From positions 203,119 through 267,118 of IMG/VR virus record IMGVR_UViG_3300030329_006583: a stretch of DNA of 64,000 nt. One strand, written 5' to 3'. A program made the translations under genes and the position numbers. The first letter of the stretch is position 1; each line of letters starts with the position of its first letter. The notes below the pieces were generated by a model. It ran no database searches. It had not been told where the DNA came from and was given only the letters and a program-made list of their open reading frames with translations. Positions 16,206-52,107 of this stretch are shown piece by piece.

Positions 16206-17129
16206 TTAAGCGGCGGCAATTAAGTGTTTAAAATCTTCAAGGTATTTAAACAACGCCTGTTCTTTGGCTTTACATTCTAACACCACATCCAAATCTAACC
16301 CCAAATCTTGAAAAGGTTCATAATAATATGTAGAATGTGTACATGCAGGAACTTTGGGATCCTCGTATTTTTTCTTGGAATTAGAATGATGACATGTAGG
16401 TGTCACATCCCCCCAAGTTGAAGCCGCCATATGAAGAGCCTCAGAATAAGACTGATCTTGTGGACCTAATTGAAAGTGGTGTGAATCAAATACAATAGGA
16501 ATGCCGACTCGGCGGTATACGCCATCATATAATTGTTTAGTAGAAAACATGTTTCGTTTGTCATCATTCTCAACGGTTAACCTCCTTTGAGTTGTGGGTT
16601 GTAGCAATTCAAAATTTTTGCAAAAGCGAGCCAAAGCAGAGGCACGATCTCCATAGGCACCACCAACATGAATGTTAATCTTGGAATTATGATCAGCAGG
16701 CATGCCTAACATGTCCATAATAATAGCATGATTGTCTAATTCCCTAAGGGCATTATCTACCACGTGTTTTTTAGGGCTGGCGAGGACACAAAATTGACCG
16801 GGGTGAAAAGACAATCGCTGACCACTATGATGAGCCATGCGGCCGGTGGATGCCAACACTTTACGGATCTCCGATATATCCGGTAAATCATCGAAGCGAT
16901 ATTCTGACATCCACGGAAAGAGGCACGAACTAATGCGAAATACGCCTACGTTGTGTTCATTATTCCATTCCACAATTCGCTGAAGTGATTTTACATTGCT
17001 TAATGCAATTTCACTAGCGTAAGGCAAACCCTTGGCCAACCATGTCCTTTTAATCATTCCGCGGTTGGCGCTAATCTTTTCTTTTTTTTGTAGGGTCATA
17101 TTAATACAGGCATATCCGAATCGGGTCAT
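16206..17129 (-). CDS. uvsE: UV damage endonuclease
   Basis: GYACIN, FRISS, SFHPGQF, VENDD, VFDSHH, ECKAKEQA. Confidence 0.93.
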   Translation of the reverse strand: MTRFGYACINMTLQKKEKISANRGMIKRTWLAKGLPYASEIALSNVKSLQRIVEWNNEHNVGVFRISSCLFPWMSEYRFDDLPDISEIRKVLASTGRMAHHSGQRLSFHPGQFCVLASPKKHVVDNALRELDNHAIIMDMLGMPADHNSKINIHVGGAYGDRASALARFCKNFELLQPTTQRRLTVENDDKRNMFSTKQLYDGVYRRVGIPIVFDSHHFQLGPQDQSYSEALHMAASTWGDVTPTCHHSNSKKKYEDPKVPACTHSTYYYEPFQDLGLDLDVVLECKAKEQALFKYLEDFKHLIAAA

Positions 17130-17202: not shown

Positions 17203-17679
17203 TTAACCCAGGCCCTGGAATCCATTGGAACCTGTGAGCATCTGCCGTATGGGATTTGACGGAACGGTTGTTAAACCCGCTATAACGTGAATCGTCGCCG
17301 CACCACCATAACCTCCGTCACGGAAAAAAACCCCGCTGGCCTTTACCTCATACGGGCCGGCATAGGTACCTCCCTCAAACACCTTTATGTAATTACGATT
17401 AGAACCGGTGAGATTGTAGCCTGGGTTGGGGGTTGTGACCCCGGCGGTGGCACTTGAACCATGTGTACCATTTGCGGTAAAACCCATCAAAATAGGCGCA
17501 GTTCCACCAACTCCATGCTGTGCCACGTAGATCCATCGCGATACAAAAGGGAAGTGAAAATGGATGAAAGGATTAGAACCATCGAGCTCACCAGTAAGCG
17601 AGGAACTCACGTATGGAATCCCGGATAACTGGTACTCTTGCACGTTGTTGTGATCATTTGCAGGCCAATTTAAACTCAT
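17203..17679 (-). CDS. Beta-rich hypothetical protein, paralog of 17684..18124
   Basis: MSLNW..NHN..YQ.SGIP.V.SS...FPFV.RWI...LTGSNGFQG.G shared. Confidence 0.8.
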   Translation of the reverse strand: MSLNWPANDHNNVQEYQLSGIPYVSSSLTGELDGSNPFIHFHFPFVSRWIYVAQHGVGGTAPILMGFTANGTHGSSATAGVTTPNPGYNLTGSNRNYIKVFEGGTYAGPYEVKASGVFFRDGGYGGAATIHVIAGLTTVPSNPIRQMLTGSNGFQGLG

Positions 17680-17683
17680 TTAA

Positions 17684-18124
17684 TCACCCAATTCCCTGGA
17701 AACCGTTTGAGCCCGTAAGCAATCGCCTCAAAGGATCGGCTGGAACATTTGTTAAGCCCGCTATTACCTGAACGGTGCTGGCGCCGCCTTCACCTTGGAA
17801 ATAAAGATCTGTGCAACGTACCTCTATGGGTCCCAAGGATTTCCCGGCATCGACCACCGCGTAATTCATGTTTGAACCCGTGGGACTGTAAGCGCCTAGG
17901 TTTGCAGCCAGAATACCGTTTGCGGTAAACGACATTTTAAACCCATTACCTTGTTCAGTACATACCACTTGAATCCAGCGTGTAACAAATGGGAATCTTA
18001 TATGAACCAAATCACCGGCACCGGCAGTCACCTCATTATCTAGCGATGAGGTAACAAACGGAATTCCTGACTGTTGATATGCTGGCACATAATTATGATT
18101 GTTTCCAGCCCAATTTAAACTCAT
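17684..18124 (-). CDS. Beta-rich hypothetical protein, paralog of 17203..17679
   Basis: Same conserved blocks. Confidence 0.8.
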   Translation of the reverse strand: MSLNWAGNNHNYVPAYQQSGIPFVTSSLDNEVTAGAGDLVHIRFPFVTRWIQVVCTEQGNGFKMSFTANGILAANLGAYSPTGSNMNYAVVDAGKSLGPIEVRCTDLYFQGEGGASTVQVIAGLTNVPADPLRRLLTGSNGFQGIG

Positions 18125-26336: not shown

Positions 26337-26610
26337 TCATATCATTAAACATTTCAATCATACTTTCTTGAAACCTGGGATCACGTGCTGTTTTGTCTAT
26401 TTGATTAATATCGGTGACGCCATATAATTCACATAATGGACTTGCCAGTTTTTTCATAGCTCGCAGAAAAACATTTCTTGCAGTTGCATGATTCATTTTA
26501 TGACCGCGCTCTGTCATGATTTCTGCGATTGTACGGTAATCATTACCATCATACTCAGAAGAAACTGTGGCATAACCACCTTCACTCTTAAATCCTTTAG
26601 GCATGCTCAT
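26284..26610 (-). CDS. Putative HTH protein coupled to the sigma gene
   Basis: DYRTIAEIM...NHATARNV; overlaps the sigma stop. Confidence 0.55.
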   Translation of the reverse strand: MSMPKGFKSEGGYATVSSEYDGNDYRTIAEIMTERGHKMNHATARNVFLRAMKKLASPLCELYGVTDINQIDKTARDPRFQESMIEMFNDMNAGPHKEDSDGSTIMVA

Positions 26611-27389
26611 TGAATCATCTCCTTGGTTTGTTGATTTAATTTTAGAAAATCCTTTTCATTCACCACAAAATCCGAACGAGACTCAGGGGTTGAAATACCA
26701 AACCTTAAACGAATCACCTGTTCTTCCCTGTGACTCAAGCTTTTTAAGGCCTCCTTGAGCAATCGTGATACCTTTTCTCCGTCCAGCAAAGACTCAACGT
26801 TAGGCGTATCCAAATCTGGAATCACCTCCCGCAAAGTCCTGCTACCGGAATCACCGCTGTTTTTATAATTGATCGGTCGATCAAGGGAAACGGGGGATGT
26901 TGCACATGTAGAAATATTTTTAAGCATTTTCAATGTAACGCCAACCAAATCGGCAACTTCTTCTTGGGATGGTTGTACACCGAATTCCTTATAATATTCT
27001 TCCTGCGCTTGCTTTATTTTCCACAACAGATTACGCGTATATGAAGGTAGTTTTACAGAAGTCGATTGTGAAGTGACATGACGCCGAACAGCCTGCTTTA
27101 TCCACCAACAGGCATATGTTGAAAACTTAAAACCCCTTCGCCAATCGTAACGATCAACCGCTTTCATCAATCCAATGTTAGACTCCTGAATTAAATCTTC
27201 TAAATCACAACCTTTGTCTTGATATTTTTTAGCAATACTGATGGCCAATCGAATATTAGCCCTCACCATATGATCACGCGCCCGAGTATCCCCTTTTTCA
27301 ATGCGCTGAGATAATTCAATTTCTTGTTCACGGGTCAATAGGGATGTTTTTGACACATCTTTGAAAAAACTTTCCAAACTATTTTGCAT
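26607..27389 (-). CDS. Sigma70-family (RpoD/RpoS-like) sigma factor lacking region 1.1 and with a divergent region 4.2
   Basis: ANIRLAISIAKKY, DLIQESNIGLMKAVDRYD, FSTYACWWIKQAV, REEQVIRLRFGI. Confidence 0.92.
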   Translation of the reverse strand: MQNSLESFFKDVSKTSLLTREQEIELSQRIEKGDTRARDHMVRANIRLAISIAKKYQDKGCDLEDLIQESNIGLMKAVDRYDWRRGFKFSTYACWWIKQAVRRHVTSQSTSVKLPSYTRNLLWKIKQAQEEYYKEFGVQPSQEEVADLVGVTLKMLKNISTCATSPVSLDRPINYKNSGDSGSRTLREVIPDLDTPNVESLLDGEKVSRLLKEALKSLSHREEQVIRLRFGISTPESRSDFVVNEKDFLKLNQQTKEMIQ

Positions 27390-32326: not shown

Positions 32327-32518
32327 TTAGTCGTGAAAATCTTCCGTATAAATGAAGGCAACCTTATTAATGACATAATGAATATCTCCCCGTGGGCCCC
32401 ACTTAAAAAATGGTATCATTCCACGTAACATCACACATATTCCGCTACCCATTAAAAACAGTCCCACCTTACAATGCAGTTTTAACTTTTTATAATATTC
32501 ATTCATGGGGATGCTCAT
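32327..32518 (-). CDS. Small hypothetical protein
   Basis: Overlaps the upstream stop. Confidence 0.5.
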   Translation of the reverse strand: MSIPMNEYYKKLKLHCKVGLFLMGSGICVMLRGMIPFFKWGPRGDIHYVINKVAFIYTEDFHD

Positions 32519-33738
32519 TTTTTCTTGAGATCATATGAATTTCTGAAATCATTTAAAACATCTAACAATGTTTTGCCTTGTGCTGTTTTGGCCAATGATC
32601 CCTCGTCAATCCCAAATTCTGCCTGTAAAGCCGCTAATTCTTCCTGTAACGATGATTGTAAATTCATCAGGGAATCCTGAAGTTGTTGACGCGTAGTATC
32701 TGTCGATTGTTGAAAGATTTTTTCAGCAGCGGATTTAAGTAATTCATCCTCATTAACATCGGGTAATGCCTCGTCGGGATTAAGTTTTTTACCTTCTTCT
32801 TGTGCTAGCGCCCTAATTAATTCATCTCGTTGTTCCGGATTACTTAAAAATTCCTTAGCGGATTTTTCCAGTGAAGAACGTAATGTATTTGGGTTTGCGC
32901 CCCCCAGATCCATGCCTGCCTTGGAAGCCTTTTGGAGCCCTTCTATATATTCATCCAGAGTTTTGCTATTCATCATTTCACCTATAAGTTGCCTTGAAGG
33001 CATATAAATTTCATCTAAATTTTCCAATGCATCCCTAAAACCCTCAAGGAGCTGATCAGAAGCATCCTTGAATTCGTCCAGGATACCCATTTCTTCCATC
33101 ACATCGATGATGTCAGATTGCGATATTGCACCCCCTTGTTCCAGCAAGAGATCGTTGGTTGGATAATAAGATTCTGCCACCCCAAAAAAGAACACTTTTT
33201 TTAGTGCATTAAATGCAGTTCCTATTAAACCGGTTGGATCCTTTATTTTATCTCCGCTCTCCGCGGATTCTTTTTCAGAAGGTTTACCAAATCCAGCCTC
33301 ACCAAAAAAATCTCTCACAGCATCTTTGGAATCCCAGCCTTGTTGAAGTGCCGACGCCGCCAAATACCCACCTGGATTCAATAAAAACGCTGCTAATTTA
33401 AGATCCTCTGTATCAGCGCCTAATTTTTGGCGCAAATCAGCATGTTCCTGTTTAAGGGTTTTCACCCTTTCCTTGTAATTGGTTCTTAATTCCTTTAATT
33501 TTTTAGGATCAATAGTAACCAAAACATCAAATAAAAATTTAGTGGAAGTTAGTACATCCTTAAACCCCAGCTTAGCTGCCTTGAATACATCGCTAAAAGG
33601 TTCAACAAAAATTTTACTAAATTCGCTGGTTGACATTGCAGCAAATTCATCTTCCCTCAACAGAACCTTGGCATCTGTTTCGTGTAAGATATTGCGAATA
33701 TATTTTCTTACCAACTTTTCCTGGGTAATTGCTTTCAT
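32515..33738 (-). CDS. Tagged alpha-helical protein, candidate internal virion protein
   Basis: QEKLVRKYIRNILHE...LLRE; internal LLLEQ. Confidence 0.75.
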   Translation of the reverse strand: MKAITQEKLVRKYIRNILHETDAKVLLREDEFAAMSTSEFSKIFVEPFSDVFKAAKLGFKDVLTSTKFLFDVLVTIDPKKLKELRTNYKERVKTLKQEHADLRQKLGADTEDLKLAAFLLNPGGYLAASALQQGWDSKDAVRDFFGEAGFGKPSEKESAESGDKIKDPTGLIGTAFNALKKVFFFGVAESYYPTNDLLLEQGGAISQSDIIDVMEEMGILDEFKDASDQLLEGFRDALENLDEIYMPSRQLIGEMMNSKTLDEYIEGLQKASKAGMDLGGANPNTLRSSLEKSAKEFLSNPEQRDELIRALAQEEGKKLNPDEALPDVNEDELLKSAAEKIFQQSTDTTRQQLQDSLMNLQSSLQEELAALQAEFGIDEGSLAKTAQGKTLLDVLNDFRNSYDLKKK

Positions 33739-33971: not shown

Positions 33972-34073
33972 AATAAATCCTTTCTCTAATAATATCTATG
34001 TTATAAGAAATTGAAAAACGTTTTTCAACGTTCATTTAAATAAGACGTAAATACACTTCTTAAAGGGGGAAAC

Positions 34074-34499
34074 ATGAGTGTAGGAGCAGTAGGAGCAGTA
34101 TCCAGTGGAGGCGGTGCAGCCGCAGCAGGGGCAGGACGCGTGTCTCATGGTGGTGGGGTTAGTAAAGCCGGGGCCAGTGCCGGGGTAACACCAGCAGGAA
34201 ATTCTGGTGGCAATAAATCCATATCAATGGGTGATGGAAACATGGTTGGGAATTCCCAAACACAAAACATTACCACACATAATCATTTCAACATGGGTTC
34301 TCAAGACTTTTGTGCCCTGCACAATATGTCCAATGGCAGTCAGGCCGGCGGTGTACAGGCCATGCAAGGTGGAGAGCAAATGTCAATGGAAGACATGATG
34401 AAGCTTATGATGATGATGATCATGATGAAGCTTATGGAAAAAATGATGGAAGCATTGGGCGGTGGCCAAGGCGGTGGAGCTGCAATGGCGGGTGGTTAG
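34074..34499 (+). CDS. Gly/Met-rich low-complexity protein
   Basis: Isolated plus-strand gene with purine-rich RBS; MMKLMMMMIMMKLMEKMM. Confidence 0.75.
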   Translation: MSVGAVGAVSSGGGAAAAGAGRVSHGGGVSKAGASAGVTPAGNSGGNKSISMGDGNMVGNSQTQNITTHNHFNMGSQDFCALHNMSNGSQAGGVQAMQGGEQMSMEDMMKLMMMMIMMKLMEKMMEALGGGQGGGAAMAGG

Positions 34500-34501: not shown

Positions 34502-35107
34502 TTAACCCATTATGATTTGCCGTACATAAGTTCTTAACATATTTTCTTGCATTCCGGGGCAAAGGATGTCACGCACATTCTTCACATCAACTCCGGCCGG
34601 CATTCCTTTCTGAAACGTATCTAGATCACAGATCTCTAAGGCATGGCGCATGGCAGTCCCCGAAATATCTGGGGTTCCCACCCCACGGGTGACGCTATCC
34701 GGATCGTCTTCTGCGACAAATATCACCTTGCCACTCTCATATAAATCTGGAAAATACCTTAGGCGATTAGAGGTAGGGTAGTTCAAGGCAGTGTCTTCCG
34801 GATCCGAATAGACCCTATAGACATCATCACCCAGGGCCTCGTTTGCCCTCTCTAGGGCACTGTAGACCTTTCGAACAGGGGAACCACCATACTCTATGGA
34901 AACATTACTCGGCATGATTGGCTCTAGCTCTTCTTTCCACACCTGTTCCATAGCGGAGCCTAGGATAGGAAGCTGGCCTTTGCGCTTACGATCTGAAATG
35001 GAAACGTATAGGATCACCTGATCATTTTCTTCTGCGGCCTTAACAACCAGCGCATGGTGACCGGCGTGATAGGGTTTCGCAGATACAGGAACCAATCCAA
35101 TTTTCAT
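34502..35107 (-). CDS. HIGH-motif nucleotidyltransferase (cytidylyltransferase/NMNAT-like) with C-terminal tag
   Basis: KPYHAGH, ISGTAMR; ends ENMLRTYVRQII. Confidence 0.8.
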   Translation of the reverse strand: MKIGLVPVSAKPYHAGHHALVVKAAEENDQVILYVSISDRKRKGQLPILGSAMEQVWKEELEPIMPSNVSIEYGGSPVRKVYSALERANEALGDDVYRVYSDPEDTALNYPTSNRLRYFPDLYESGKVIFVAEDDPDSVTRGVGTPDISGTAMRHALEICDLDTFQKGMPAGVDVKNVRDILCPGMQENMLRTYVRQIIMG

Positions 35108-35124
35108 TTAATTTTTCCTTTCAA

Positions 35125-35478
35125 TTAAAATGTATTCAATACCACATGCGCAAACAGGGTCTCAGTTTGAGGATCCCAATAAAATTGCTTAGGCCCACCG
35201 GGCATGCCGGGAGTCAATGATGAAAAGAAATGATCGGCTTGCTCTTGCGGCGGGAGACCTTTCTTAGACGACCACACCTCATGCTGATCCGGCTTATAAC
35301 TTGCCCGCGGGATATTCTGGGTCATTGCCCTAACCTCTTCCACTGTCCCAATCTTAACATCCATCTCTCTTCCGGATGGAGTTACAATCACAGTGGGGGC
35401 GCCCATGAGTTCTGCACTCTGCTCTCGCAAGAGTACTTCACCAATAATTTTCCTGAGTCGATTCTTTGTAATTTTCAC
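35125..35478 (-). CDS. Tagged hypothetical protein
   Basis: MKITKNRLRKIIGEVLLRE. Confidence 0.75.
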   Translation of the reverse strand: MKITKNRLRKIIGEVLLREQSAELMGAPTVIVTPSGREMDVKIGTVEEVRAMTQNIPRASYKPDQHEVWSSKKGLPPQEQADHFFSSLTPGMPGGPKQFYWDPQTETLFAHVVLNTF

Positions 35479-35481
35479 TTA

Positions 35482-36636
35482 TTACACCTTGATTCTATCA
35501 ATAATTTGGGGGGAGCTCATAGCGAGATCCTTGTATAATTTTTTCATGACAGCCTTGGAGATGTCTCCAATCTCTTGTTTGGTCGCCTTGTCCTTTAAGA
35601 TCTTCTTCACTTCATCCTGGATTGTCTTCACAAAGTTGGTACCCACCACCTTGTCAATCTCTTTTTTTGCTTGCTTACGGGCGATTTTCTCGATCTCTTT
35701 CTTATCGGTTTTGGTGAGCTCTTCAAATAATAAGGATTCACGTACTAATGCACCTATAATATCCTTAATCTCACTTATTTCAGGTGACGAAGTTGAAGAT
35801 AAAAATTGATACAAGCAAGCAAATGGATTGATCTTCCCAGCGCCCTCCATGGATTCCCCGGCCAAGGCTGAAAAAGAAGAATTAGGGGGATTAAAAGTTG
35901 TTATTTTTAATTCAGGTTGAATTTCATAAAACTGACTACGAGTCGAGACCCTGATCTTAAAATTTCCCGAACCAGCCACCATGGGAATGCTGGAATTTAA
36001 ACCACAGAATTCCAAGGCACCTTTAAGGCCCAAAGGATCTTGATCGCCAATTGTATAAAAATCATCCCCGGCCTGAAGATAGTGGGCAGCGGCCGCCTTA
36101 CCGATAAGATAATGCTGGGTTATAAGATTACCTACATCCACATTTTCTTCGTTAACAAAATAACGGCTCCCTCTTTCGTTAACGAAATTTCTCATCACCT
36201 CTAGAGGAACCGCCGCCGGATCCTTTAAGCCACCTTTGGTTGTGGGAATCTTGATAATGGTGTCCGGAGATACACCCATATATACCTTGAGGTCATCAAT
36301 AAATTGTGATGCAGTAGATGAATTATTCGCTAAATCCACAGCGGCATCTGCCACGGGTGATGTAGCATTAGAAGCCCAGGTCGAACCGTCATAATAAATT
36401 CGAGGATTGGCTAAGTTGTCTTTGTGGCCCATTTTAACTTCTACGTAAGTGGATCCCACTCCAGGAACCTCTACCAAAACATCCGGATATCTTACATCTC
36501 CGCCAGCTGCAGAAGCCTTAAATATTTCACGACCTGCATTATTAATTGCGCCGGCGACCTCGGCCTCAAAAGCATCAGAGGCTTTAGATTCCATTAATAG
36601 CACTTGAACCCATTTACGCAATAAACGATCATTCAT
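35482..36636 (-). CDS. Tagged PD-(D/E)xK nuclease-like protein with helical C-terminal domain
   Basis: FEAEVA...YPDVLV...YVEVKM; tag at N-term and before the tail. Confidence 0.6.
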   Translation of the reverse strand: MNDRLLRKWVQVLLMESKASDAFEAEVAGAINNAGREIFKASAAGGDVRYPDVLVEVPGVGSTYVEVKMGHKDNLANPRIYYDGSTWASNATSPVADAAVDLANNSSTASQFIDDLKVYMGVSPDTIIKIPTTKGGLKDPAAVPLEVMRNFVNERGSRYFVNEENVDVGNLITQHYLIGKAAAAHYLQAGDDFYTIGDQDPLGLKGALEFCGLNSSIPMVAGSGNFKIRVSTRSQFYEIQPELKITTFNPPNSSFSALAGESMEGAGKINPFACLYQFLSSTSSPEISEIKDIIGALVRESLLFEELTKTDKKEIEKIARKQAKKEIDKVVGTNFVKTIQDEVKKILKDKATKQEIGDISKAVMKKLYKDLAMSSPQIIDRIKV

Positions 36637-37922
36637 CCCATTCCACCCACAAATTCCCTTACATAATTACGGAGGAGCGACTCATTTTGACTCTTGGGAA
36701 TGCGCATTGCAGCACCGATGATCTGGTTGAGGGGTGCAAAGGCCCCTGTGAGCTTGTAAAGTGCCTTGCTTCCAGGAGGATGTTCGAACACGATCCCCTC
36801 CATGCTGGAAGTGATGTTCTCGGATGATCCCAATTTGCCCAACTGTTTCTCCAACATCTTGCGTCTATCATCAGCCTTGGCATCCCGCGCAGATGCAATC
36901 GCTTTCTTGGCGGATTCCAGCTCATCCTTAAGCCGATTCAATTCCTCGTCATGGCCACCGGTTAACGCCGAAGCCAATCCTGCCAACACCTCAACAGACA
37001 TATCATGAATAATTATCTCCACCGGAGACAAAATGGTACCCAAGGCTTTCATCGCATTGGCCTGAGTACCGAGGGCACTAATGCTTTTCTGCACGTCCTT
37101 CGGAAGATCTTTCTTGATATCAGCGATGGGAGGTAGGTCTTTGGATTCCATCCCTTGCCCAATCCCCATGATTCTCTTGATCAGCGTCTCTTGTTTGTGA
37201 ACCGGAATTGGCAGGTCTCCGACCAAACCCGTTCGTAGTTTTTCCTCAGCATAATCGCCCAGCGTCATGTTATCTGTAACGCCTAACCCATCAAGTCGAC
37301 TCGCAAGAGTATCATATAGCTCGGTACCGCTTAGGTCCTGCAGTTCTATCACCTGCGGACCAATCATCTTCCAGGTCTCATCATCCAGATCTACCTGGGA
37401 ATCATCAATGGCCTGCACAAGCTTACCGAACTCACCACCGTTCAATTGGACGTCAGCCAGTTTACCAGCTTCATCAAACTCCTGAAGGTTGTGCATGACG
37501 ATGTAGTCACCACCGTAATTGATGACATTGGGCTTACCCGTATAGATAATCTCAGCGTTGATGAAACGTTGACCGCCGGACTCAAAGATCTCTTCCAGCT
37601 CCATGGGACTCAGTCGACCCAATCCCCGTTCAATAGCTGCAAACCCATTCATAAAAGCGCCTTTTGCGGGATGACCTTCCCATTTGGCAGTGAACTCAGC
37701 GGGGTTCATCCCACCCTTGAGTAGATCACCCTTATTCCGAGCTGTTCGAATATTGCCTGTTTTGGGATCAATCTTAAACGCAAAGAAGATGTTTTGGCCA
37801 TCAACCTTTTCAACCACCGGCATATCACCCCTAATCACCTTTTGGAGCACACCTTTCAATTCCCCAAAGGTAATATCCAGGTTTTCTTGTAAATGATTTA
37901 GATGACCTGCTAGCGCTCCCAT
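36633..37922 (-). CDS. Ligase-like nucleotidyltransferase (KxDG, DUF6267-like) with C-terminal tag
   Basis: GHLNHL, VEKVDGQN, EGIVF...YKLTGAFAPLNQI; ends ESLLRNYVREFV. Confidence 0.7.
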   Translation of the reverse strand: MGALAGHLNHLQENLDITFGELKGVLQKVIRGDMPVVEKVDGQNIFFAFKIDPKTGNIRTARNKGDLLKGGMNPAEFTAKWEGHPAKGAFMNGFAAIERGLGRLSPMELEEIFESGGQRFINAEIIYTGKPNVINYGGDYIVMHNLQEFDEAGKLADVQLNGGEFGKLVQAIDDSQVDLDDETWKMIGPQVIELQDLSGTELYDTLASRLDGLGVTDNMTLGDYAEEKLRTGLVGDLPIPVHKQETLIKRIMGIGQGMESKDLPPIADIKKDLPKDVQKSISALGTQANAMKALGTILSPVEIIIHDMSVEVLAGLASALTGGHDEELNRLKDELESAKKAIASARDAKADDRRKMLEKQLGKLGSSENITSSMEGIVFEHPPGSKALYKLTGAFAPLNQIIGAAMRIPKSQNESLLRNYVREFVGGMG

Positions 37923-37945
37923 GTAACCTCCTATATTACATAGAT

Positions 37946-37974
37946 ATTATACCATATCTCATGTAATTTTGCAT
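37946..37974 (-). promoter_or_regulatory. Promoter ATGCAA-N17-TATAAT
   Basis: Variant of the recurrent motif. Confidence 0.55.
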
Positions 37975-38255
37975 TAAGGTTGTTCTATTTTTCTAGAAGC
38001 ACGTAATTGGCGCCGAAGGATTTTTAAAAGGCCATTATAATGTTCACGGGCGTCGGTCCTACCGGGGCAACAATCACGGTGGTGTTTGGCGTCTTCAATC
38101 CGGTGTTCCAAATCCAAGGTACATGCCTTAGTGCCAAAAGACACCATTTTGCCCGACATTGTAAGGTGTTTATCGGGGACCGCTAGTTTGGTAGGGGATT
38201 CCTGAAGAATTTGACGAATCATATGTCGCAATCTGATATTATCCATTATTTCCAT
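37974..38255 (-). CDS. Small tagged protein
   Basis: IRLRHMIRQILQE. Confidence 0.7.
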   Translation of the reverse strand: MEIMDNIRLRHMIRQILQESPTKLAVPDKHLTMSGKMVSFGTKACTLDLEHRIEDAKHHRDCCPGRTDAREHYNGLLKILRRQLRASRKIEQP

Positions 38256-38890
38256 AACTCCCGAATTTTCATACGAACCCCGGATTTATCTGCTGCTTCG
38301 CCCACCACGATGGGCATATCTTCGTCCCCTTCTTCTTCCTTTGTTTTTACAGTGGTTACCTTAATTTCCTCTGTCTCTTCTTCCCTTGAAGGTTTCTCGG
38401 TTGGTTTCATTTCAATGCCGGCCTTCCCGGGATCAAGGGCTAGTGTCCCAGGTTCACCATCTACCATCATATCTGCCAACCCGGCCAGGAAAACATATAG
38501 CGATTGTTTCTCGGCTGTCGTCAATTGCTCGATGTAGGTAGTAAGAGCCTTTTTCACCTTGGCATCCTTAACTGATTTACCTGAGCGCATTAGATTTAAC
38601 ATTTTAAAAATATCGCCGGTTTGAGGATCTGCAATTTTTTCCTGGCCCGGTTTTGCGACGTCTGTAGTGGTGATTGTCTCCTCAGAGGTTTCTTCCTCCG
38701 TTTCTTCTTCAGCTTCATCGACATTTTTTTTCTGCGAATTATCATCTTGCTCGGCTGTTTGCTGTGCCAATTGTTTTTGACGAAGGCGTTCCAATGTGCC
38801 GGTATCTTCCATTGCTGCGTCCACAGCCTCACGTACAATATTACCCAAAAAATGTTCTAGATCTTTCACATTATTAAATACCCTAGACAT
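38246..38890 (-). CDS. Acidic hypothetical protein
   Basis: Start MSRVF; LEHFLGNIVREAV. Confidence 0.7.
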   Translation of the reverse strand: MSRVFNNVKDLEHFLGNIVREAVDAAMEDTGTLERLRQKQLAQQTAEQDDNSQKKNVDEAEEETEEETSEETITTTDVAKPGQEKIADPQTGDIFKMLNLMRSGKSVKDAKVKKALTTYIEQLTTAEKQSLYVFLAGLADMMVDGEPGTLALDPGKAGIEMKPTEKPSREEETEEIKVTTVKTKEEEGDEDMPIVVGEAADKSGVRMKIRELWK

Positions 38891-47162: not shown

Positions 47163-47687
47163 CTAAAGAGGAAGGTGATCGGTCTTTATGCCGGAATTAA
47201 TTAACAACTCCACCCCCGCTGTATCGCGATATTCATTTGCATAATACACCTCATTAATGCCGGCATTTATCATTGCTTTGGCACACATACGACACGGAGA
47301 CAAAGTAACATACATTTTTTTCTTTTTGTGCGTATTATAATCCATTTTTAGTAATGCATTAATTTCGGCATGAATCATTCCGGAATGACCGGGCTCAGTT
47401 GACTCTACCTCGTTTGGCCCGCCGGCATAATTCCCATTATACCCCACCGCTAAAACCTGAGTATTGTCACCGGAAACTACAATGGCACCCACTTGATTTC
47501 TAGGATCGTAAGAACGTCGACTGATGGAATTTGCAAATTCCATCCAAATTTCATCCCACGGAGGCCGGTGTTTAGTGCGCCGAGATGGCATTACTTTTTC
47601 TACCCCTTCCTTTAATTGCGCAGTTACCTCTGCCCTTAATTCCTCCGGAACGTATTGTTCTATTATTTCAAATATCTTTCCCAACAT
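47163..47687 (-). CDS. dCMP deaminase
   Basis: GYNG, HAEINA, TLSPCRMC. Confidence 0.9.
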   Translation of the reverse strand: MLGKIFEIIEQYVPEELRAEVTAQLKEGVEKVMPSRRTKHRPPWDEIWMEFANSISRRSYDPRNQVGAIVVSGDNTQVLAVGYNGNYAGGPNEVESTEPGHSGMIHAEINALLKMDYNTHKKKKMYVTLSPCRMCAKAMINAGINEVYYANEYRDTAGVELLINSGIKTDHLPL

Positions 47688-48243
47688 TATCTTCCTTTTG
47701 ATTTATAAAGGGGTAATGTTCCCAACACCTAGGTTCATAATATTCAGCACCACCCACTGTAATCTCATCCAATCCCTTCACTTTGTGGTGAGTATAATAA
47801 GCATCGCGCCCAGTGCGAGGGCACACAGCGGGACAAATTTCAATTTTGGTAGCCCAAGGCATCATATCCCTCACCTCCTCAAAAACTTTCCCAGCAGCTG
47901 ATAATTGTAAAGATGACACAACAACTGTCACCCCGGTTTGAAAAATCTTCAAAAGTGCGATAGCTGAGCCATCAATCATGAACGCTTCATCCACCCCTAC
48001 CACATCAGGTTTGTATTCGGTGACCGCATCCCAGATTTCCTTCCCGTTAGAAACCAACGTGGCAGGAAACGTAGTACCTGAATGTGTGCTTATCTCTTTT
48101 TCAGTGTATCTATCGTCCATCCTTGGTTTAAATGCCATTACGCGTAAATTTTGATATGTAAATCTCTCAAGTGACGCCAACATTCGGGTGGTTTTAGAAC
48201 CAAACATAGGCCCTGTAAAAATAATAAAACTAGGATCTCTCAA
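47668..48243 (-). CDS. tdk: Thymidine kinase
   Basis: GPMFGSKT, VDEAF, VGGAEYYEPRC. Confidence 0.9.
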   Translation of the reverse strand: MRDPSFIIFTGPMFGSKTTRMLASLERFTYQNLRVMAFKPRMDDRYTEKEISTHSGTTFPATLVSNGKEIWDAVTEYKPDVVGVDEAFMIDGSAIALLKIFQTGVTVVVSSLQLSAAGKVFEEVRDMMPWATKIEICPAVCPRTGRDAYYTHHKVKGLDEITVGGAEYYEPRCWEHYPFINQKEDNVGKDI

Positions 48244-49254
48244 TTAATTCTCCTCCAATCCCCACCACGCAAATGTTTTTTCCAAGCCGGCGGCCAAATT
48301 TGTCTGGGGTGTGTATCCCAATTTTTCTTGTGCCAACGATGTATCAGCCAGGGTCTTCATTACATCACCTGGGCGCCAAGGGGCATGTTTAATTTTAATA
48401 TCATTGAACTTATTTTTAAAAATCTCCAGAATTTCATTATTTGAACATGATTCACCATACCCTACATTAAACACATTACCGCATACGTCATCTTTTGTAG
48501 TCGCGGCCAAAATATTTGCATTGACCACATCATCAACAAAAACCATATCCCTCACTTGAGTACCGTCACCATCACTACGAAGGGGGAGATTATTTTTTGT
48601 AGCATGACACCACGCGCCAATTGCAGTAGAATAAGGGCTGTCGCCGTATTGGTGTGGCCCATAAACATTGAAATACCTCAAAGACACAATTTTCATCCCA
48701 TAAAGTTTATGAAACAACTCAGCAAAATATTCTCCGCACAACTTTTGTAACGCATAAGGTGATTGAGGATCTTTCTCCATTGTTTCCGGCGTAGGAAAAA
48801 TCTGGGCATCTCCATATACCGATGATGAACTTGAAAATATTACACGCCGAGTATTGCCAACTGACACCTGAAATAAGGCTATGGTTTTAAATAAATTTGT
48901 TTCTGTGGTGGCCACTGGATCATCCACGGAATGTTCCACCCGGGGAAGGGCCGCCATATGAAAAACATAATCGTATATTCCTGATTTTACCCTATTTAAC
49001 ACATTATCATGCGCAAAATCGCCGGTTATAACCAAAACTTGTGTGGGGTTGATTTCGTGTTTATCTTCATGCTCTTCCTCATAAAGATGTAATAAATCTG
49101 CATGGACTGTGCGAGGTTTAACGCTGTCCAAAAAATCTAAATATCCGTTGGACATATCATCAACTACGTCCACAGACCAACCTTTTTTATGCAGCCCAAG
49201 AACTAAGTTGCTGCCAATAAAACCACACCCACCTGTCACCAAACATTTAACCAT
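48244..49254 (-). CDS. NAD-dependent NDP-sugar epimerase/dehydratase (GalE/WbpP-like)
   Basis: TGGCGFIGS, SSSSVYG, YALQK, LRYFNVYGP. Confidence 0.9.
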   Translation of the reverse strand: MVKCLVTGGCGFIGSNLVLGLHKKGWSVDVVDDMSNGYLDFLDSVKPRTVHADLLHLYEEEHEDKHEINPTQVLVITGDFAHDNVLNRVKSGIYDYVFHMAALPRVEHSVDDPVATTETNLFKTIALFQVSVGNTRRVIFSSSSSVYGDAQIFPTPETMEKDPQSPYALQKLCGEYFAELFHKLYGMKIVSLRYFNVYGPHQYGDSPYSTAIGAWCHATKNNLPLRSDGDGTQVRDMVFVDDVVNANILAATTKDDVCGNVFNVGYGESCSNNEILEIFKNKFNDIKIKHAPWRPGDVMKTLADTSLAQEKLGYTPQTNLAAGLEKTFAWWGLEEN

Positions 49255-49264
49255 AATTTTCCCC

Positions 49265-50257
49265 TTATTCCAAAATATGATATCCCACAAAATTGGTGGA
49301 ATTTTGAACCGCAATCGAATCTTTTTCCAAGCCTAATTTTTTAAGCCGATGAGATACCAAAATTTTCCCCCAATCTTTCCAATATGAAACATCATCAATC
49401 TCAAGGCCATCAATTTCCTCGATTAACGCATTAATTTCTTCAACGTCATTCAATAAACGTAGATGTTTTTCAAATAACATCATTTCCTTAATCGGCATAT
49501 CCTTTGATAATGCCGGCATTTCACCGCGAGCCAATTGAAGCATTTTTGATTGACCTACTTCCTCGGAACGTAAAATATTCTCAACCATTTCAAAATGCCT
49601 TTCATAAATGTGAAGTGAATTACTGATATGTGTATATGTCCCTAACTCCACACCTAGTTCCAAAGCCAACATTTCTTGAAACATGGTAAATGCAGGAATA
49701 TCATAGGCAATCCCAAGTATCAAATCTGATGATCTCATATTAGTAATCATATGCAATTTTTCATCCCTGATCAAAAATTGCAAGGTGAGAGTACAAGGCA
49801 CATCCAGCTTTGCACTAACAGAATCCCATGGGCTCCGAATGTGAATGACGGCCCTCCTAGAATCTGGATCTTTCTTCAATTCATCAATAATGTATTCCCA
49901 CTGAATCAAGGAAAAATTAGCAATCCTGCCATGTGGTTTAAATATCCTGGCACCATATGCCGAATTAGCTGTCTTACCATCATCACTAATATTATTCCAA
50001 AATGACGAATAATTTGCGATCCACTCTGTTGAGTCATCCCCGGAAAGATACCACAATAACTCCGCAATCATATAATGCATTGAAAATTTACGTGGCCGAA
50101 CATAAGGAATTCTATTCCTTGGGTTTTTCAGCACAAACTTCACTGCCAATTTCTCTTTCACTTTTTGGCCACGGGGACTGGAAATATAATCAGGGGAATT
50201 GTAGACGTCATTTAACAAACTTAAATAACAATCGGTAAAATTATCAAAATTACGCAT
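49265..50257 (-). CDS. Thymidylate-synthase-fold dCMP-modifying enzyme (hydroxymethylase-like)
   Basis: ELLWY, DSRRAV, VPCT, MRSSDLILGIAYD (Asp at the specificity position), SLHIYE. Confidence 0.8.
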   Translation of the reverse strand: MRNFDNFTDCYLSLLNDVYNSPDYISSPRGQKVKEKLAVKFVLKNPRNRIPYVRPRKFSMHYMIAELLWYLSGDDSTEWIANYSSFWNNISDDGKTANSAYGARIFKPHGRIANFSLIQWEYIIDELKKDPDSRRAVIHIRSPWDSVSAKLDVPCTLTLQFLIRDEKLHMITNMRSSDLILGIAYDIPAFTMFQEMLALELGVELGTYTHISNSLHIYERHFEMVENILRSEEVGQSKMLQLARGEMPALSKDMPIKEMMLFEKHLRLLNDVEEINALIEEIDGLEIDDVSYWKDWGKILVSHRLKKLGLEKDSIAVQNSTNFVGYHILE

Positions 50258-51580
50258 TTAATTGTCCTCCTTCACTGATTTTTCAACAGATAAAAGTCTC
50301 ATTTTACGCAAAGCCGCAGTGGTTGTACGCTCATAACTACACCTTTTTTGAACGGCATTTCGCAAACCCCATTCATCATTAAATGTCACGGTACCAATTT
50401 CATCCTCTGAAGTATAACAGTTTTTTTGAGCATTGTCAATCAAATTATCCAAAACATTCACCACATCACTCAAATCCGGATTGGCAACATATGGATAGTT
50501 CACTTCATCTGCAATTAATTTATATTCATAATTGTCTACCCAAAGTGGTAAACACCCCAATTCAATGCATTCACGAGCCGCAGTGCCACCATAGCTATCG
50601 ACGTTATAAAGACCCACGGCAATATGTGATTTGCGTGCTACGTATCGATATTCATTTCTGGTAAATGTATCATCAATCAAATGAAGATAAGGTTGGCAAT
50701 ATTGTTGTAATTCTTTATTTGAAAATTTCTGTGAAGGATTGCCTGCAATTACCACAAAATCCTGCCTTTTTTCATAAAGTTGATTACACAATTCAAATAA
50801 AAATTTACCACAATTTGTATAATCAGAGCTCCTACCCATTCCACCCACACGATTAGGTACAAAAATCACAGTTTTATCAGCAGGTATTTCAAACCTAAGT
50901 TCATTGACATCAACATTTTTTGTGATTTCTTCCTTAGAATAACCATCATCCCATGGGGAAGATTTCTCTGCGATTTGTGTAACTAATTTATCCTTATGTT
51001 CTACAGCCAATGAATCCAAGAAAATATTCAATGCAGATTCACATTGCCAAAAATTATAGTCTGCTTTGTCAGCAGCCTCAATTTGCCCGCGCCATAATGA
51101 ACCCTCCAACGGAAATTTAGGTGCCGCAGGATTATCAATAAAATGAGAATGCACTGCAAAAAAGGGTTGATATCCCCCTTCCAGAAAAAACAAGGTTTTA
51201 AAATTCCTCAGCAACATGGGATCATTAATATACACATGAGAATAACGTAGTGAATTTTGGGTTTTATGCCCTTTTAAATTAAGCAAGATTGCCAGCGCTT
51301 CAAAATCAAAATCATAACGTGTGGCAAGAGCATTAGGAATGATTTTGTGCCTGAGATAATTAACCCTTGGGTTTATATTAATATCCGGATATAACTGTTC
51401 AGGCTGGGTTATGACCTGTTCACGCAACGGGCACATAATATCAATATGCAAATCTGGTACCAGATCTAACATTACCCTCACCCTTCCCATCACCATCTGC
51501 CAGCCGGAATCTGCCTCTAGAATAAATTTTCCATTAGAATCATAATTTGACAATTGGGTTTGAATCAATAGTTTTTTCAT
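50258..51580 (-). CDS. Putative GT-B glycosyltransferase
   Basis: VIFVPNR, DSYGGTAARECIELGCLP (resembles the GT4 ExFG..xxE motif); gene context. Confidence 0.6.
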   Translation of the reverse strand: MKKLLIQTQLSNYDSNGKFILEADSGWQMVMGRVRVMLDLVPDLHIDIMCPLREQVITQPEQLYPDININPRVNYLRHKIIPNALATRYDFDFEALAILLNLKGHKTQNSLRYSHVYINDPMLLRNFKTLFFLEGGYQPFFAVHSHFIDNPAAPKFPLEGSLWRGQIEAADKADYNFWQCESALNIFLDSLAVEHKDKLVTQIAEKSSPWDDGYSKEEITKNVDVNELRFEIPADKTVIFVPNRVGGMGRSSDYTNCGKFLFELCNQLYEKRQDFVVIAGNPSQKFSNKELQQYCQPYLHLIDDTFTRNEYRYVARKSHIAVGLYNVDSYGGTAARECIELGCLPLWVDNYEYKLIADEVNYPYVANPDLSDVVNVLDNLIDNAQKNCYTSEDEIGTVTFNDEWGLRNAVQKRCSYERTTTAALRKMRLLSVEKSVKEDN

Positions 51581-52107
51581 TTTTTACCTTTTAAAAATGC
51601 TGTAATTTCATCAATCTCTTGTTCTAAATCTTCACTATCAACATTCAAATAATAAATGTCGCATTGTGTCCATTTACCAAATTCAAAATAAAGCTTTGAT
51701 AATTTATTTAAATTTTCCTCTGTTAATAAATCGGGGCGATCTTCATCATATAAACCAGAATAATCAGATCTGAAACATACAATGATTTTGGTACCCAATG
51801 ATGCAAAATGTCGATCAGAATTTCTCACCGCTGATAAATCTGTTTCTCGATGAAAAAATTGAGAATATACCCACTCACAAGGATAGGCACGATCCAATAT
51901 CAAAGAATAGCCGGTTTGGCTTAGTAAATCCAACATACGTGGATCTGCATATCTCATTTCATTAATAAAGTTTTTTTCATTTCTAAATTTTGATTTTTCA
52001 TCACAAGCCTTAAAGGTTGGAATACCTAATCGGGAGGATAATTCATGCGCAATTTCTGTTTTTCCTGTTTTATCCGGACCACAAAAAATTATAAGTTGCT
52101 GTTCCAT
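51577..52107 (-). CDS. dNMP kinase (thymidylate-kinase-like)
   Basis: GPDKTGKT, ILDR. Confidence 0.8.
   Translation of the reverse strand: MEQQLIIFCGPDKTGKTEIAHELSSRLGIPTFKACDEKSKFRNEKNFINEMRYADPRMLDLLSQTGYSLILDRAYPCEWVYSQFFHRETDLSAVRNSDRHFASLGTKIIVCFRSDYSGLYDEDRPDLLTEENLNKLSKLYFEFGKWTQCDIYYLNVDSEDLEQEIDEITAFLKGKK

What the first reader, a model, noticed from the sequence alone, without database searches (positions are those of the whole stretch)
34502..37922. All-tagged operon: ligase-like nucleotidyltransferase, PD-(D/E)xK nuclease, small protein, HIGH nucleotidyltransferase
Seen: four consecutive tagged genes behind one promoter. The two enzymes whose folds start at residue 1 carry the tag at the C-terminus. 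Inference: a co-packaged nucleotide-transfer/repair module (RNA or NAD repair, anti-defence) acting at injection.
Basis: partly seen in the sequence, partly recalled or inferred. Interest (0 to 1): 0.6.

Follow-up and report, generated by a model that had tools for sequence, protein, structure and literature searches.

The report
Capsid-targeted enzyme cargo operon, jumbo phage
Four neighbouring genes of an uncultured marine T4-like jumbo phage each carry a short peptide that closely resembles phage T4's capsid-targeting signal, so their enzymes are probably packed into the phage head and injected with the DNA; only two of the four (an RNA-ligase-like enzyme and a nucleotidyltransferase) are a conserved working pair.

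Summary
Window 34502-37922 (minus strand) carries four tightly packed genes behind one copy of a promoter motif that recurs in this genome. All four bear a terminal peptide of the type LLRxY(I/V)Rx(L/I)L. It is N-terminal on the nuclease and the small protein, and C-terminal on the ligase-like enzyme and the HIGH nucleotidyltransferase (NTase).

The window lies in a 267-kb viral contig that encodes a T4 gp23-type capsid protein and a T4 gp21-type prohead protease. The tag consensus MKLLREYIRE matches the T4 capsid targeting sequence MKTYQEFIAE at positions 1, 2, 6, 8 and 10, with F/Y at 7. Every N-terminal copy contains a hydrophobic-x-Glu motif. Packaging into the head is therefore the best reading, but it is inferred, not shown.

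Folds:
- RNA-ligase-family nucleotidyltransferase with KxDG (Z about 10 to Rnl1, REL1 and NgrRnl).
- HhaI-like PD-(D/E)xK endonuclease (Z 10.4).
- NMNAT/PPAT-like HIGH NTase.

The four genes are not a conserved module. In 80 related viral loci the NTase is fused to the ligase-like gene in 47 and nearby in 17. The nuclease is present in 2 and the small protein in none. No kinase/phosphatase or Nampt partner was found, so the RNA-repair and NAD-repair readings remain open. This is a new variant of the T4 internal-protein system.

The parts
37946..37973 (-). Promoter: TGCAAA (37968-37973), 16-nt spacer including the TG, extended -10 TGgTATAAT (37946-37954). Shine-Dalgarno AGGAGG about 37927-37932.
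   Evidence: Sequence read. The motif class has 20 copies on the minus strand, 3 on the plus strand and about 1 in shuffles.
36633..37922 (-). RNA-ligase-family covalent nucleotidyltransferase-like protein (429 aa). Motif I EKVDGQN (K39), motif III E124, motif IV EGIV (E375/G376), motif V K390. A helical insert of about 180 aa (res 195-370) sits between motifs IIIa and IV.
   Evidence: Invariant residues in 32 homologues. AF2 model pLDDT 88. Foldseek top hits are all RNA ligases. VIA Z is 10.2-9.5 to REL1, T4 Rnl1, NgrRnl, Trl1 and Rnl2, against 6-7 for DNA ligases.
36636..36683 (-). C-terminal tag of the ligase-like protein (NESLLRNYVREFVGGMG), preceded by a Glu.
   Evidence: The tag core lies in the last 24 aa of 95 of 106 standalone homologues, 94 of them with a Glu just before it. 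None has it at the N-terminus. Internal 24-aa windows carry it at 0.6%.
35482..36636 (-). Composite protein (384 aa): N-terminal tag (res 1-16), HhaI-like PD-(D/E)xK endonuclease core (res about 17-280; E24, D52, E66-V-K68), internal tag IIGALVRESLLFEE (res 293-306, nt 35719-35760), and a helical C-terminal module (res 307-384, nt 35485-35718) shared with otherwise unrelated proteins.
   Evidence: Invariant residues. Model pLDDT 86. R.HhaI 6uke Z 10.4 over 177 aa, then Hjc, HinP1I and MspI. The C-terminal module is shared with P0169-P0185 and with the gene after the ligase in L006, L008 and L010.
35125..35478 (-). Small tagged protein (117 aa, GTG start, tag KITKNRLRKIIGEVLLRE). Function unknown.
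   Evidence: Only 8 close homologues (64-70% identity). No family, fold or Atlas lead. Absent from all 80 related loci.
34502..35107 (-). HIGH-superfamily nucleotidyltransferase (201 aa): HxGH = HAGH (res 14-17), ISGTAMR (res 148-154), C-terminal tag ENMLRTYVRQIIMG (nt 34505-34546).
   Evidence: PDB profile hits: NMNAT 1f9a at 3e-7, NadR-type NMNAT 9x6f at 4e-7, PPATs at about 1e-4. PHROG cytidyltransferase/NMNAT. NCBIfam hits lie far below their cut-offs. 416 family representatives, many of them fusions.
37974..38255 (-). Upstream tagged 93-aa gene (N-terminal ...NIRLRHMIRQILQE). Conserved directly upstream of the ligase-like gene in relatives.
   Evidence: Fused to an NTase in P0297.
32515..33738 (-). 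Downstream tagged 407-aa gene (N-terminal ...KLVRKYIRNILHE). Conserved next to the NTase in relatives.
   Evidence: Homologues are fused to the NTase in P0202, P0225 and P0226.
34074..34499 (+). Convergent Gly/Ala/Met-rich ORF (141 aa) that abuts the NTase stop codon and closes the transcription unit.
   Evidence: Good Shine-Dalgarno sequence. A homologous ORF sits at the same place in L010.

Best explanation
The four genes are one promoter-driven stretch of an island of cargo genes in a T4-like jumbo phage.

Each product carries a short amphipathic peptide that is the counterpart of the T4 capsid targeting sequence (CTS). The peptide docks the protein to the scaffolding core of the prohead. 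The gp21-type prohead protease then cuts after a Glu, either inside or just past N-terminal tags or just before C-terminal tags. The mature enzymes stay in the head and enter the cell with the DNA, as T4 IPI-III and Alt do. The tag sits at the C-terminus where the N-terminus belongs to the catalytic core.

Within the operon only two genes form a conserved functional pair. One is an RNA-ligase-fold enzyme whose Lys39 in KxDG probably takes a covalent NMP. The other is an NMNAT/PPAT-like HIGH nucleotidyltransferase. Most relatives fuse the two into one polypeptide, so they most likely act in one nucleotide-transfer pathway on a 5'-phosphate end or a phospho-metabolite, by sealing, capping or making a cofactor.

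The slot after the ligase-like gene is variable. It holds a changeable effector domain, here an HhaI-like DNA endonuclease, joined through a second tag to a constant helical module. A lineage-specific small tagged protein follows; it could be a partner or inhibitor of the effector.

Shown: gene structure, tag statistics, folds and motifs, fusions and synteny, and the presence of gp21/gp23 homologues. Inferred: packaging, cleavage, injection, substrates and every biochemical activity.
For: - The genome has T4 Gp23 (E 1e-64) and Peptidase_S77/gp21 (E 2e-27), plus portal, scaffold and small core-like genes around them. Two small proteins beside the protease start with tag-like N-termini.
- The T4 CTS is MKTYQEFIAE (PMC8442874). 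Residues 4 and 7 serve targeting and residues 8 and 10 serve processing. Alt and gp21 also lose C-terminal propeptides (PMC9026906). The window's consensus MKLLREYIRE shares M1, K2, E6, I8 and E10, with an aromatic residue at 7.
- 22 of 28 tag copies are N-terminal (3 of them just after an internal Met) and 3 are C-terminal. 22 of 22 N-terminal tags contain [LIVMF]-x-E, against 32% of background windows.
- C-terminal tags are conserved in homologues and almost always follow a Glu: 94 of 106 ligase-like proteins and 23 of 82 NTases.
- Tags also occur at domain junctions: the nuclease/C-module junction here, P0107 and P0175.
- Other tagged genes encode enzymes: HD_4 and DUF192.
- Ligase-NTase coupling: 47 fusions, 17 neighbours and 16 without an NTase in 80 loci. 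46 of the 47 fusion junctions lack a tag, so these are true bifunctional proteins. The reverse domain order occurs in Microcystis phage Mel-JY01.
- Folds.
Against: - There is no virion proteomics and no RNA data; no RNA run holds the region.
- The operon's promoter class (TGCAAA...TATAAT) is not seen in front of the head genes, and its timing is unknown. Cargo must be present when proheads assemble.
- The [LIVMF]-x-E statistic is partly built into the motif that defines the tag.
- P3 of the Glu before the C-terminal tags is not always hydrophobic (QNE in the ligase-like protein).
- Motif V of the ligase-like protein has only one Lys (K390; T392 replaces the second). No Pfam ligase family is matched by sequence.
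- The complex prediction for ligase-like plus NTase gave no verdict.
- An active DNA endonuclease inside a DNA-filled head would need its own DNA to be protected or the enzyme to be kept inactive.
Confidence: 0.6

Rival explanations
1. The tag is not a packaging signal. It is a handle for the phage's own chaperones (the genome encodes DnaK, DnaJ and GroEL homologues) or for another assembly or compartment in the infected cell. The tagged enzymes would then act inside the producing cell.
For: The tag is a Leu/Ile/Tyr core flanked by Arg/Lys, which resembles the known DnaK-binding pattern (general knowledge). DnaK-, DnaJ- and GroEL-like ORFs lie in the window. The T4 gp23 N-terminus targets fusions to GroEL (PMC3012670). 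The operon promoter differs from those of the head genes.
Against: The match to the T4 CTS is position-specific and includes the processing residues I8 and E10. A hydrophobic-x-Glu motif is always present. A gp21-type protease is in the genome. Tag-like N-termini occur on small proteins in the head module. Tags occur at domain junctions, as expected of cleavage sites.
Confidence: 0.12
2. The operon is a dedicated RNA healing-and-sealing system, like T4 Pnkp plus Rnl1. It would be pre-packed so that tRNAs cut by host anticodon nucleases can be rejoined before any phage protein is made.
For: The ligase-like fold is closest to RNA ligases: T4 Rnl1, Trl1, Rnl2, REL1 and NgrRnl at Z about 10. Delivery that does not depend on translation would make sense against tRNA-cutting defences. 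RNA ligases in jumbo phages commonly travel with an NTase partner, RlaP (PMC7824862).
Against: No polynucleotide kinase/phosphatase was found: AAA_33 gave only sub-threshold hits elsewhere and none in the operon. The partner NTase is of the HIGH type, not a Pol-beta-type end-filling enzyme. The PD-(D/E)xK nuclease is not needed for repair and is not conserved with the pair. PF09414 RNA_ligase does not match.
Confidence: 0.15
3. The NTase is an NMN adenylyltransferase, and the pair restores or uses NAD+ against NAD-depleting defences. For example, an NAD-using ligase-fold enzyme could have its NMN recycled by the fused NMNAT.
For: The best PDB and NCBIfam matches of the NTase are archaeal and NadR-type NMNATs, and a PHROG NMNAT family matches. 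A Nudix-box ORF lies beside the NTase in L050. NMNAT-Nudix and NMNAT-kinase pairs are known in jumbo phages (PMC7824862).
Against: The matches cover mostly the generic HxGH strand-helix (first 45 residues or so) and lie far below the family cut-offs: 24 bits against 341. PPAT, PanC and citrate-lyase-ligase models score similarly. No Nampt/NAPRTase was found in the genome. NAD-dependent ligases have a distinct Ia domain, which was not detected here.
Confidence: 0.13

Closest known systems
Phage T4 internal proteins IPI-III and Alt with their capsid targeting sequence, processed by prohead protease gp21
   Same: A short terminal propeptide of the same pattern (MK..xE[F/Y]IxE). The genome also has a gp21-family protease and a gp23-family capsid protein. 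Unrelated mature proteins share only the tag. T4 offers precedents for an enzyme cargo (Alt) and for C-terminal propeptides (Alt, gp21).
   Different: There are about 30 tagged genes rather than a handful. Many are enzymes: a ligase-like protein, a HIGH NTase, a REase-like nuclease, HD_4 and DUF192. The tag is longer (LL.E extension), occurs in two sub-types (MKLLREYIR.. and MKITKRQLRKII.EE), is used at either terminus, and occurs between domains of composite proteins. Nothing has been shown experimentally.
Ejection (E) and inner-body proteins of phiKZ-like and SPN3US-like giant phages, cleaved after Glu by a gp21-related protease
   Same: A large set of head-internal proteins matured by cleavage after Glu. 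Multiple cleavage sites and polyprotein-like propeptides are known there (PMC9026906).
   Different: Those phages use S/A/G-x-E sites and long, non-conserved propeptides. Here a short conserved targeting peptide of the T4 type is used, and the capsid protein is gp23-like.
ATP-dependent RNA ligases (T4 Rnl1, Rnl2, REL1, NgrRnl, Trl1 ligase domain)
   Same: The nucleotidyltransferase fold and motifs I, III and IV, plus the first Lys of motif V.
   Different: No sequence-level family match. A helical domain of about 180 aa is inserted between motifs IIIa and IV, instead of a C-terminal domain. The second Lys of motif V is replaced by Thr. The partner is a HIGH NTase, not a kinase/phosphatase.
Pfam DUF6267 (PF19782), often fused to CTP_transf_like, in phages
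   Same: Atlas clusters with the same fold as the ligase-like model (TM 0.70-0.84 over about 400 aa) carry DUF6267 and/or CTP_transf_like and are all viral.
   Different: The DUF6267 HMM does not match this protein or this genome. The family is uncharacterised and no paper in the library mentions it.
Type II restriction endonuclease R.HhaI (also HinP1I and MspI)
   Same: The PD-(D/E)xK core with E...D...ExK, and a full-length structural match (Z 10.4, 177 residues).
   Different: No methyltransferase partner lies next to it. It carries a capsid-type tag and a C-terminal helical module, and is encoded by a phage as putative cargo.
NMNAT (archaeal and NadR type) and PPAT
   Same: HxGH and ISxTxxR motifs and a size of about 180 aa.
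   Different: Scores lie far below every family cut-off. The substrate pocket was not assessed.

Membership tests
T4-type capsid-targeting (CTS) / internal-protein system | Short terminal propeptide resembling MKTYQEFIAE, shared by otherwise unrelated proteins | tested here: met
   The consensus MKLLREYIRE shares positions 1, 2, 6, 8 and 10, with F/Y at 7. There are 28 copies and 25 are terminal.
T4-type capsid-targeting (CTS) / internal-protein system | gp21-family prohead protease and gp23-family capsid protein in the same genome | tested here: met
   PF03420 at 93 bits (cut-off 27) and PF07068 at 215 bits (cut-off 24.4).
T4-type capsid-targeting (CTS) / internal-protein system | Cleavage after Glu in a hydrophobic-x-Glu context that removes the tag | tested here: inconclusive
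   The motif is present in 22 of 22 N-terminal tags, and a Glu precedes the C-terminal tags in 94 of 106 ligase-like and 23 of 82 NTase homologues. Actual cleavage cannot be seen in sequence.
T4-type capsid-targeting (CTS) / internal-protein system | Protein present inside virions and ejected into the host | not testable with these tools
   Needs virion mass spectrometry or tagged-reporter packaging.
ATP-dependent RNA ligase (covalent nucleotidyltransferase superfamily) | Motif I KxDG with an invariant Lys; motif III and IV acidic residues | tested here: met
   K39, D41, G42, E124, E375 and G376 are invariant in 32 sequences.
ATP-dependent RNA ligase (covalent nucleotidyltransferase superfamily) | Motif V with two Lys residues (KxK) | tested here: inconclusive
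   Only K390 is invariant. The second position is an invariant Thr392.
ATP-dependent RNA ligase (covalent nucleotidyltransferase superfamily) | Nucleotidyltransferase fold closest to RNA ligases | tested here: met
   Foldseek probability 0.97-0.99 to Rnl3. VIA Z 10.2-9.5 to REL1, Rnl1, NgrRnl, Trl1 and Rnl2, against 6-7 for DNA ligases.
ATP-dependent RNA ligase (covalent nucleotidyltransferase superfamily) | Sequence match to a curated ligase family (e.g. PF09414) | tested here: not met
   No Pfam, PHROG, NCBIfam or PDB sequence hit. One relative (P0285) scores a sub-threshold E of 0.045.
ATP-dependent RNA ligase (covalent nucleotidyltransferase superfamily) | Self-adenylylation and strand joining | not testable with these tools
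   Biochemistry is needed.
Pfam DUF6267 | Match to the PF19782 HMM above its cut-off | tested here: not met
   No hit in the protein or the genome. Structural neighbours include clusters in which 16-24% of members carry DUF6267. It is probably a divergent sister family.
PD-(D/E)xK nuclease, HhaI-like type II restriction endonuclease | Catalytic E...(P/S)D...ExK signature and restriction-endonuclease-like fold | tested here: met
   E24, D52, E66 and K68 are invariant. 6uke Z 10.4 over 177 aa, spanning nearly the whole 258-residue chain.
PD-(D/E)xK nuclease, HhaI-like type II restriction endonuclease | Adjacent cognate methyltransferase (an R-M system) | tested here: not met
   The neighbours are the ligase-like gene and the small protein. 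No methyltransferase domain was found in the flanking genes scanned.
HIGH-superfamily nucleotidyltransferase (NMNAT / PPAT / cytidylyltransferase) | (H/T)xGH and ISxTxxR nucleotide-binding motifs | tested here: met
   HAGH at 14-17 and ISGTAMR at 148-154. H17, S149, G150, T151 and R154 are conserved in 56 sequences.
NMN adenylyltransferase (NadR, archaeal NadM) | Score above the equivalog cut-off; NAD-salvage partner (Nampt or RNK) | tested here: not met
   TIGR01526 scores 24 bits against a cut-off of 341. No PF04095 match in the genome.
T4 Pnkp-Rnl1 type RNA repair | 5'-kinase / 3'-phosphatase end-healing partner | tested here: not met
   PF13671 gave only sub-threshold hits elsewhere and none in the operon. 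The genome is 78% complete, so absence is not proven.

The most novel reading that the evidence does not exclude
The RNA-ligase-fold protein (a DUF6267-like family) and the HIGH NTase form a phage-specific two-step nucleotide-transfer machine. Hundreds of large phages would carry it in the virion and inject it. There it would install or repair a pyrophosphate-linked nucleotide on a nucleic-acid 5' end, for example App or NAD-type capping, or sealing of the entering genome or of host or phage RNA. That would be a translation-independent counter-defence chemistry not yet described.
Probability: 0.15. Interest if true: 0.85.

Novelty: new variant of a known kind. Interest (0 to 1): 0.62.

Why it matters
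In T4 a ten-residue peptide is enough to load any protein into the head and deliver it into the host. Here the same kind of signal labels about thirty genes of an uncultured marine jumbo phage, many of them enzymes. The set of first-minute effectors can therefore be read directly from the sequence.

This gives a testable catalogue of injected counter-defence and take-over proteins. It also shows that the tag can work from either terminus and between domains. And it singles out an uncharacterised enzyme pair, found only in viral records here (RNA-ligase fold plus HIGH nucleotidyltransferase, mostly fused), as a priority for biochemistry. A cultured Microcystis phage carries a fused version and offers an experimental entry point.

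Tried and rejected
- blastn of the region against cultured phages found no match.
- The NTase by tblastn against the phage collection found no match.
- The ligase-like profile against PDB sequences gave only coiled-coil noise.
- Pfam, PHROG and NCBIfam gave nothing for the ligase-like protein, the nuclease or the small protein.
- DUF6267 and RNA_ligase HMMs against the genome gave no hit.
- Complex prediction on ligase-like plus NTase scored 0.00. That is no verdict and is not evidence either way.
- hhalign of the roughly 450-aa insert found between the ligase and NTase domains in six 1100-aa fusions against the nuclease profile showed no relation (probability 1.4%). Pfam found nothing on that insert or on the variable effectors of L006, L008 and L010.
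- The Atlas search for the small protein gave nothing usable.
- A T4-like late-promoter motif (TATATTTA or TATAAATA) is too rare to define a class, so the timing of the operon stays unknown.
- The sequencing-run search found only marine DNA metagenomes and no RNA holder.
- I first read the many fusions between neighbouring tagged genes as Rosetta-stone evidence for a four-gene pathway. I rejected this for all but ligase-NTase. Other fusions (ligase+nuclease in P0107, the nuclease+C-module of this window and of P0175) have tags at the junction; I did not inspect the junctions of nuclease+DUF192, NTase+407 aa or NTase+93 aa. These look like cargo polyproteins. In contrast, 46 of 47 ligase-NTase junctions have no tag.
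- No alternative genetic code was used.

Full report
**Where the window lies.** The window is bases 203119-267118 of a 267,118-bp IMG/VR virus record that CheckV rates 78% complete. Nearly all genes run on the minus strand (328 of 367 ORFs). The genome encodes a T4 gp23-family major capsid protein (PF07068, 215 bits) and a T4 gp21-family prohead protease (PF03420, 93 bits). These sit in a head module with portal-, scaffold- and terminase-sized ORFs that I did not test by family search. Replication appears to use a DnaE-like polymerase, judged by eye from the 1200-aa ORF at 52156-55758. The phage is therefore a jumbo phage with a T4-type head, not a close T4 relative. It occurs in marine metagenomes.

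**The observation.** Four ORFs occupy 34502-37922 on the minus strand, separated by -4, 3 and 17 nt. Directly upstream lies TGCAAA-N16-TGgTATAAT (37946-37973), followed by AGGAGG and the ATG. This is one copy of a promoter class with 20 copies on the coding strand, 3 on the other strand and about 1 in shuffles. The unit ends against a convergent plus-strand gene (34074-34499) that is conserved in the closest relative. The simple scan found no intrinsic terminator there.

All four products carry the tag. It is C-terminal on the 429-aa and 201-aa enzymes and N-terminal on the 384-aa and 117-aa proteins. A profile of the tag finds 28 copies in the genome (the small protein's own copy falls below the profile threshold and is called by eye). 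Nineteen are in the first 15 residues (P 1e-16), 3 follow an internal Met, 3 are C-terminal and 3 are internal. Four neighbouring genes encode the identical MKLLREYIR with different codons, so the peptide is what is conserved. The neighbours on both sides are tagged too: 93 aa and 221 aa upstream, 407 aa downstream. A second tagged island lies at window 1-7100.

**What the tag is.** The T4 capsid targeting sequence (CTS) is MKTYQEFIAE (PMC8442874). Mutational work located targeting at residues 4 and 7 and processing at residues 8 and 10. The internal proteins share only this propeptide. Alt and gp21 also lose C-terminal propeptides (PMC9026906; PMC3012670).

The consensus here, MKLLREYIRE, has the same M1, K2, E6, I8 and E10 and an aromatic residue at 7. 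It usually continues with LL.E. All 22 N-terminal tags contain a hydrophobic-x-Glu triplet, against 32% of random windows, although the triplet is partly part of the motif itself. C-terminal tags are nearly always preceded by a Glu in homologues: 94 of 106 ligase-like proteins and 23 of 82 NTases. No N-terminal tag occurs in those two families, and internal windows carry the motif at under 1%.

Tags also mark domain junctions. The 384-aa protein has an internal IIGALVRESLLFEE between its nuclease core and a C-terminal helical module. P0107 has two tags between its ligase and nuclease parts. Two small proteins next to the protease gene start with tag-like peptides. Together with the gp21/gp23 homologues, this makes a T4-type capsid-targeting and processing signal the best explanation. 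Packaging, cleavage and ejection are all inferred.

One caveat concerns timing. The operon's promoter class is not found in front of the head genes, and I could not define a late-promoter class.

**The four proteins.**

- *Ligase-like protein (429 aa).* It has no sequence-family match. Residues K39, D41, G42 (KxDG), E124, E375, G376 and K390 are invariant, as is H7 near the N-terminus. The model (pLDDT 88) matches only RNA ligases at the top of the Foldseek list. The Z-scores are about 10 (REL1, T4 Rnl1, NgrRnl, Trl1, Rnl2), against 6-7 for DNA ligases. It differs from them in a helical insert of about 180 aa between motifs IIIa and IV and in a Thr at the second motif V position. Structural neighbours in the ESM Atlas are all viral and partly carry Pfam DUF6267 and/or CTP_transf_like. 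The DUF6267 HMM itself does not match. No paper in the library mentions that family.
- *Nuclease (384 aa).* The core has invariant E24, D52, E66 and K68. Its best structural match is R.HhaI (Z 10.4 over 177 aa, spanning nearly the whole 258-residue chain), followed by Hjc, HinP1I and MspI.
- *NTase (201 aa).* It has HAGH and ISGTAMR motifs. Its profile hits archaeal and NadR-type NMNATs (3e-7, 4e-7) and then PPATs in the PDB. Every curated family is far below its cut-off.
- *Small protein (117 aa).* It has eight close homologues and no other lead.

**Is it a module?** The ligase-like family has more than 500 members, all from metagenomes or viral contigs, and some are fused to an NTase or a nuclease. 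The NTase family has 416 representatives, many of them fused.

In 80 IMG/VR loci that carry the ligase-like gene, the counts are as follows:

| Partner of the ligase-like gene | Loci (of 80) |
|---|---|
| NTase fused to it | 47 |
| NTase a separate neighbour, on either strand | 17 |
| No NTase in the available flank | 16 |
| Nuclease core present | 2 |
| Small protein present | 0 |

Only 1 of the 47 fusion junctions has a tag, so these are genuine bifunctional proteins. A cultured Microcystis phage has the reverse domain order.

In relatives at about 50-70% identity, the block 221 aa - 93 aa - ligase is conserved. The next gene always ends in the same C-terminal helical module but begins with a different, unrecognisable domain. 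In the closest relative, L010, a different small tagged protein follows it, and an NTase comes next, on the same strand in L010. The operon is therefore a conserved pair plus a variable effector slot.

**Function.** The pair most likely acts in one nucleotide-transfer pathway. Which one is open.
- A T4-like RNA healing-and-sealing pathway lacks its kinase/phosphatase.
- An NAD-salvage reading lacks Nampt and rests on weak, generic NTase similarity.
- The genome holds four further small cytidylyltransferase-like genes.
- The complex prediction gave no verdict.
- The nuclease is a plausible injected host-DNA endonuclease. A thymidylate-synthase-family gene lies next to a sugar epimerase/dehydratase, with a kinase-like gene nearby (48244-52107). 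This suggests that the phage DNA may be modified and thus protected. That is speculation.

**Verdict.** The packaging reading is well supported indirectly. The four-gene functional module is not supported; a two-gene core is. This is a new variant of the T4 internal-protein system, with an uncharacterised enzyme pair seen only in viral sequences as its most interesting content.

Noticed in passing
window 34074-34499 (+): A convergent ORF of 141 aa with a Gly/Ala-rich N-terminal half and a Met-rich C-terminal half, preceded by a strong Shine-Dalgarno sequence. A homologous ORF sits at the same place in L010 (12286-12687). It is a real gene of unknown role in an otherwise one-stranded genome.
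   Followed up: partly
window 34011-34028: A perfect 18-nt palindrome, TTGAAAAACGTTTTTCAA, between the convergent ORF and the 78-aa gene. It could be an operator or an AT-rich bidirectional terminator.
   Followed up: no
window 1-7100 (-): A second island of tagged genes. It includes an HD_4 (RelA/SpoT-type HD) protein at 1611-2441 and a DUF192 protein at 2438-3463, plus several unknowns that all start with MKLLREYIR. A nuclease homologue elsewhere (P0129) is fused to DUF192.
   Followed up: partly
whole genome (G000), e.g. window 13014, 21621, 27889, 37973: A promoter class (C)GTGCAAA-N15/16-(TGG)TATAAT with 20 copies on the coding strand. Many copies are followed by AAGGAAGG leaders and hairpins in the region G000 138-192 kb. 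A sigma-70-family gene lies at window 26607-27389.
   Followed up: partly
window 61232-63992, 14725-16194, 16206-17129: Auxiliary metabolic genes: isocitrate lyase plus malate synthase (the glyoxylate shunt), ATP-dependent PEP carboxykinase and the UV endonuclease UvdE. All have strong Pfam matches.
   Followed up: partly
window 47668-52107: A thymidylate-synthase-family gene (49265-50257) lies beside an NAD-dependent sugar epimerase/dehydratase, an unknown 440-aa gene, a small kinase-like gene and a thymidine-kinase-like ORF. This may be a DNA hypermodification cluster.
   Followed up: no
L020-L089 (fusion proteins): Other clades of ligase-NTase fusions end in different conserved C-terminal peptides: a polybasic ...PKVKRAKRQRRR or an amphipathic ...IDLSLIDEVxELIxxRGI. 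These may be alternative packaging signals in non-T4-type phages. Six fusions of about 1100 aa carry an unrecognised insert of about 450 aa between the two domains.
   Followed up: partly
L095 (Microcystis phage Mel-JY01, PP395634, CDS 11243-13162): A cultured cyanophage encodes the pair as one protein in the reverse order (NTase then ligase-like), annotated only as 'cytidylyltransferase like protein'. It lies 2.6 kb upstream of the large terminase gene.
   Followed up: partly
L050 11576-12031: An ORF with a Nudix box lies directly beside the NTase in a higher-GC relative that also has the nuclease after the ligase-like gene.
   Followed up: no
G000 115348-115626, 149887-150162, 168808-169083, 184088-184348: Four more small (130-160 aa) CTP_transf_like genes in the same genome, an unusual number for a phage.
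   Followed up: no
window 17203-18124: Two tandem paralogous genes of about 150 aa (both begin MSLNW..N.HN) with no family match. Three similar small paralogues follow the capsid gene at G000 36870-38407.
   Followed up: no
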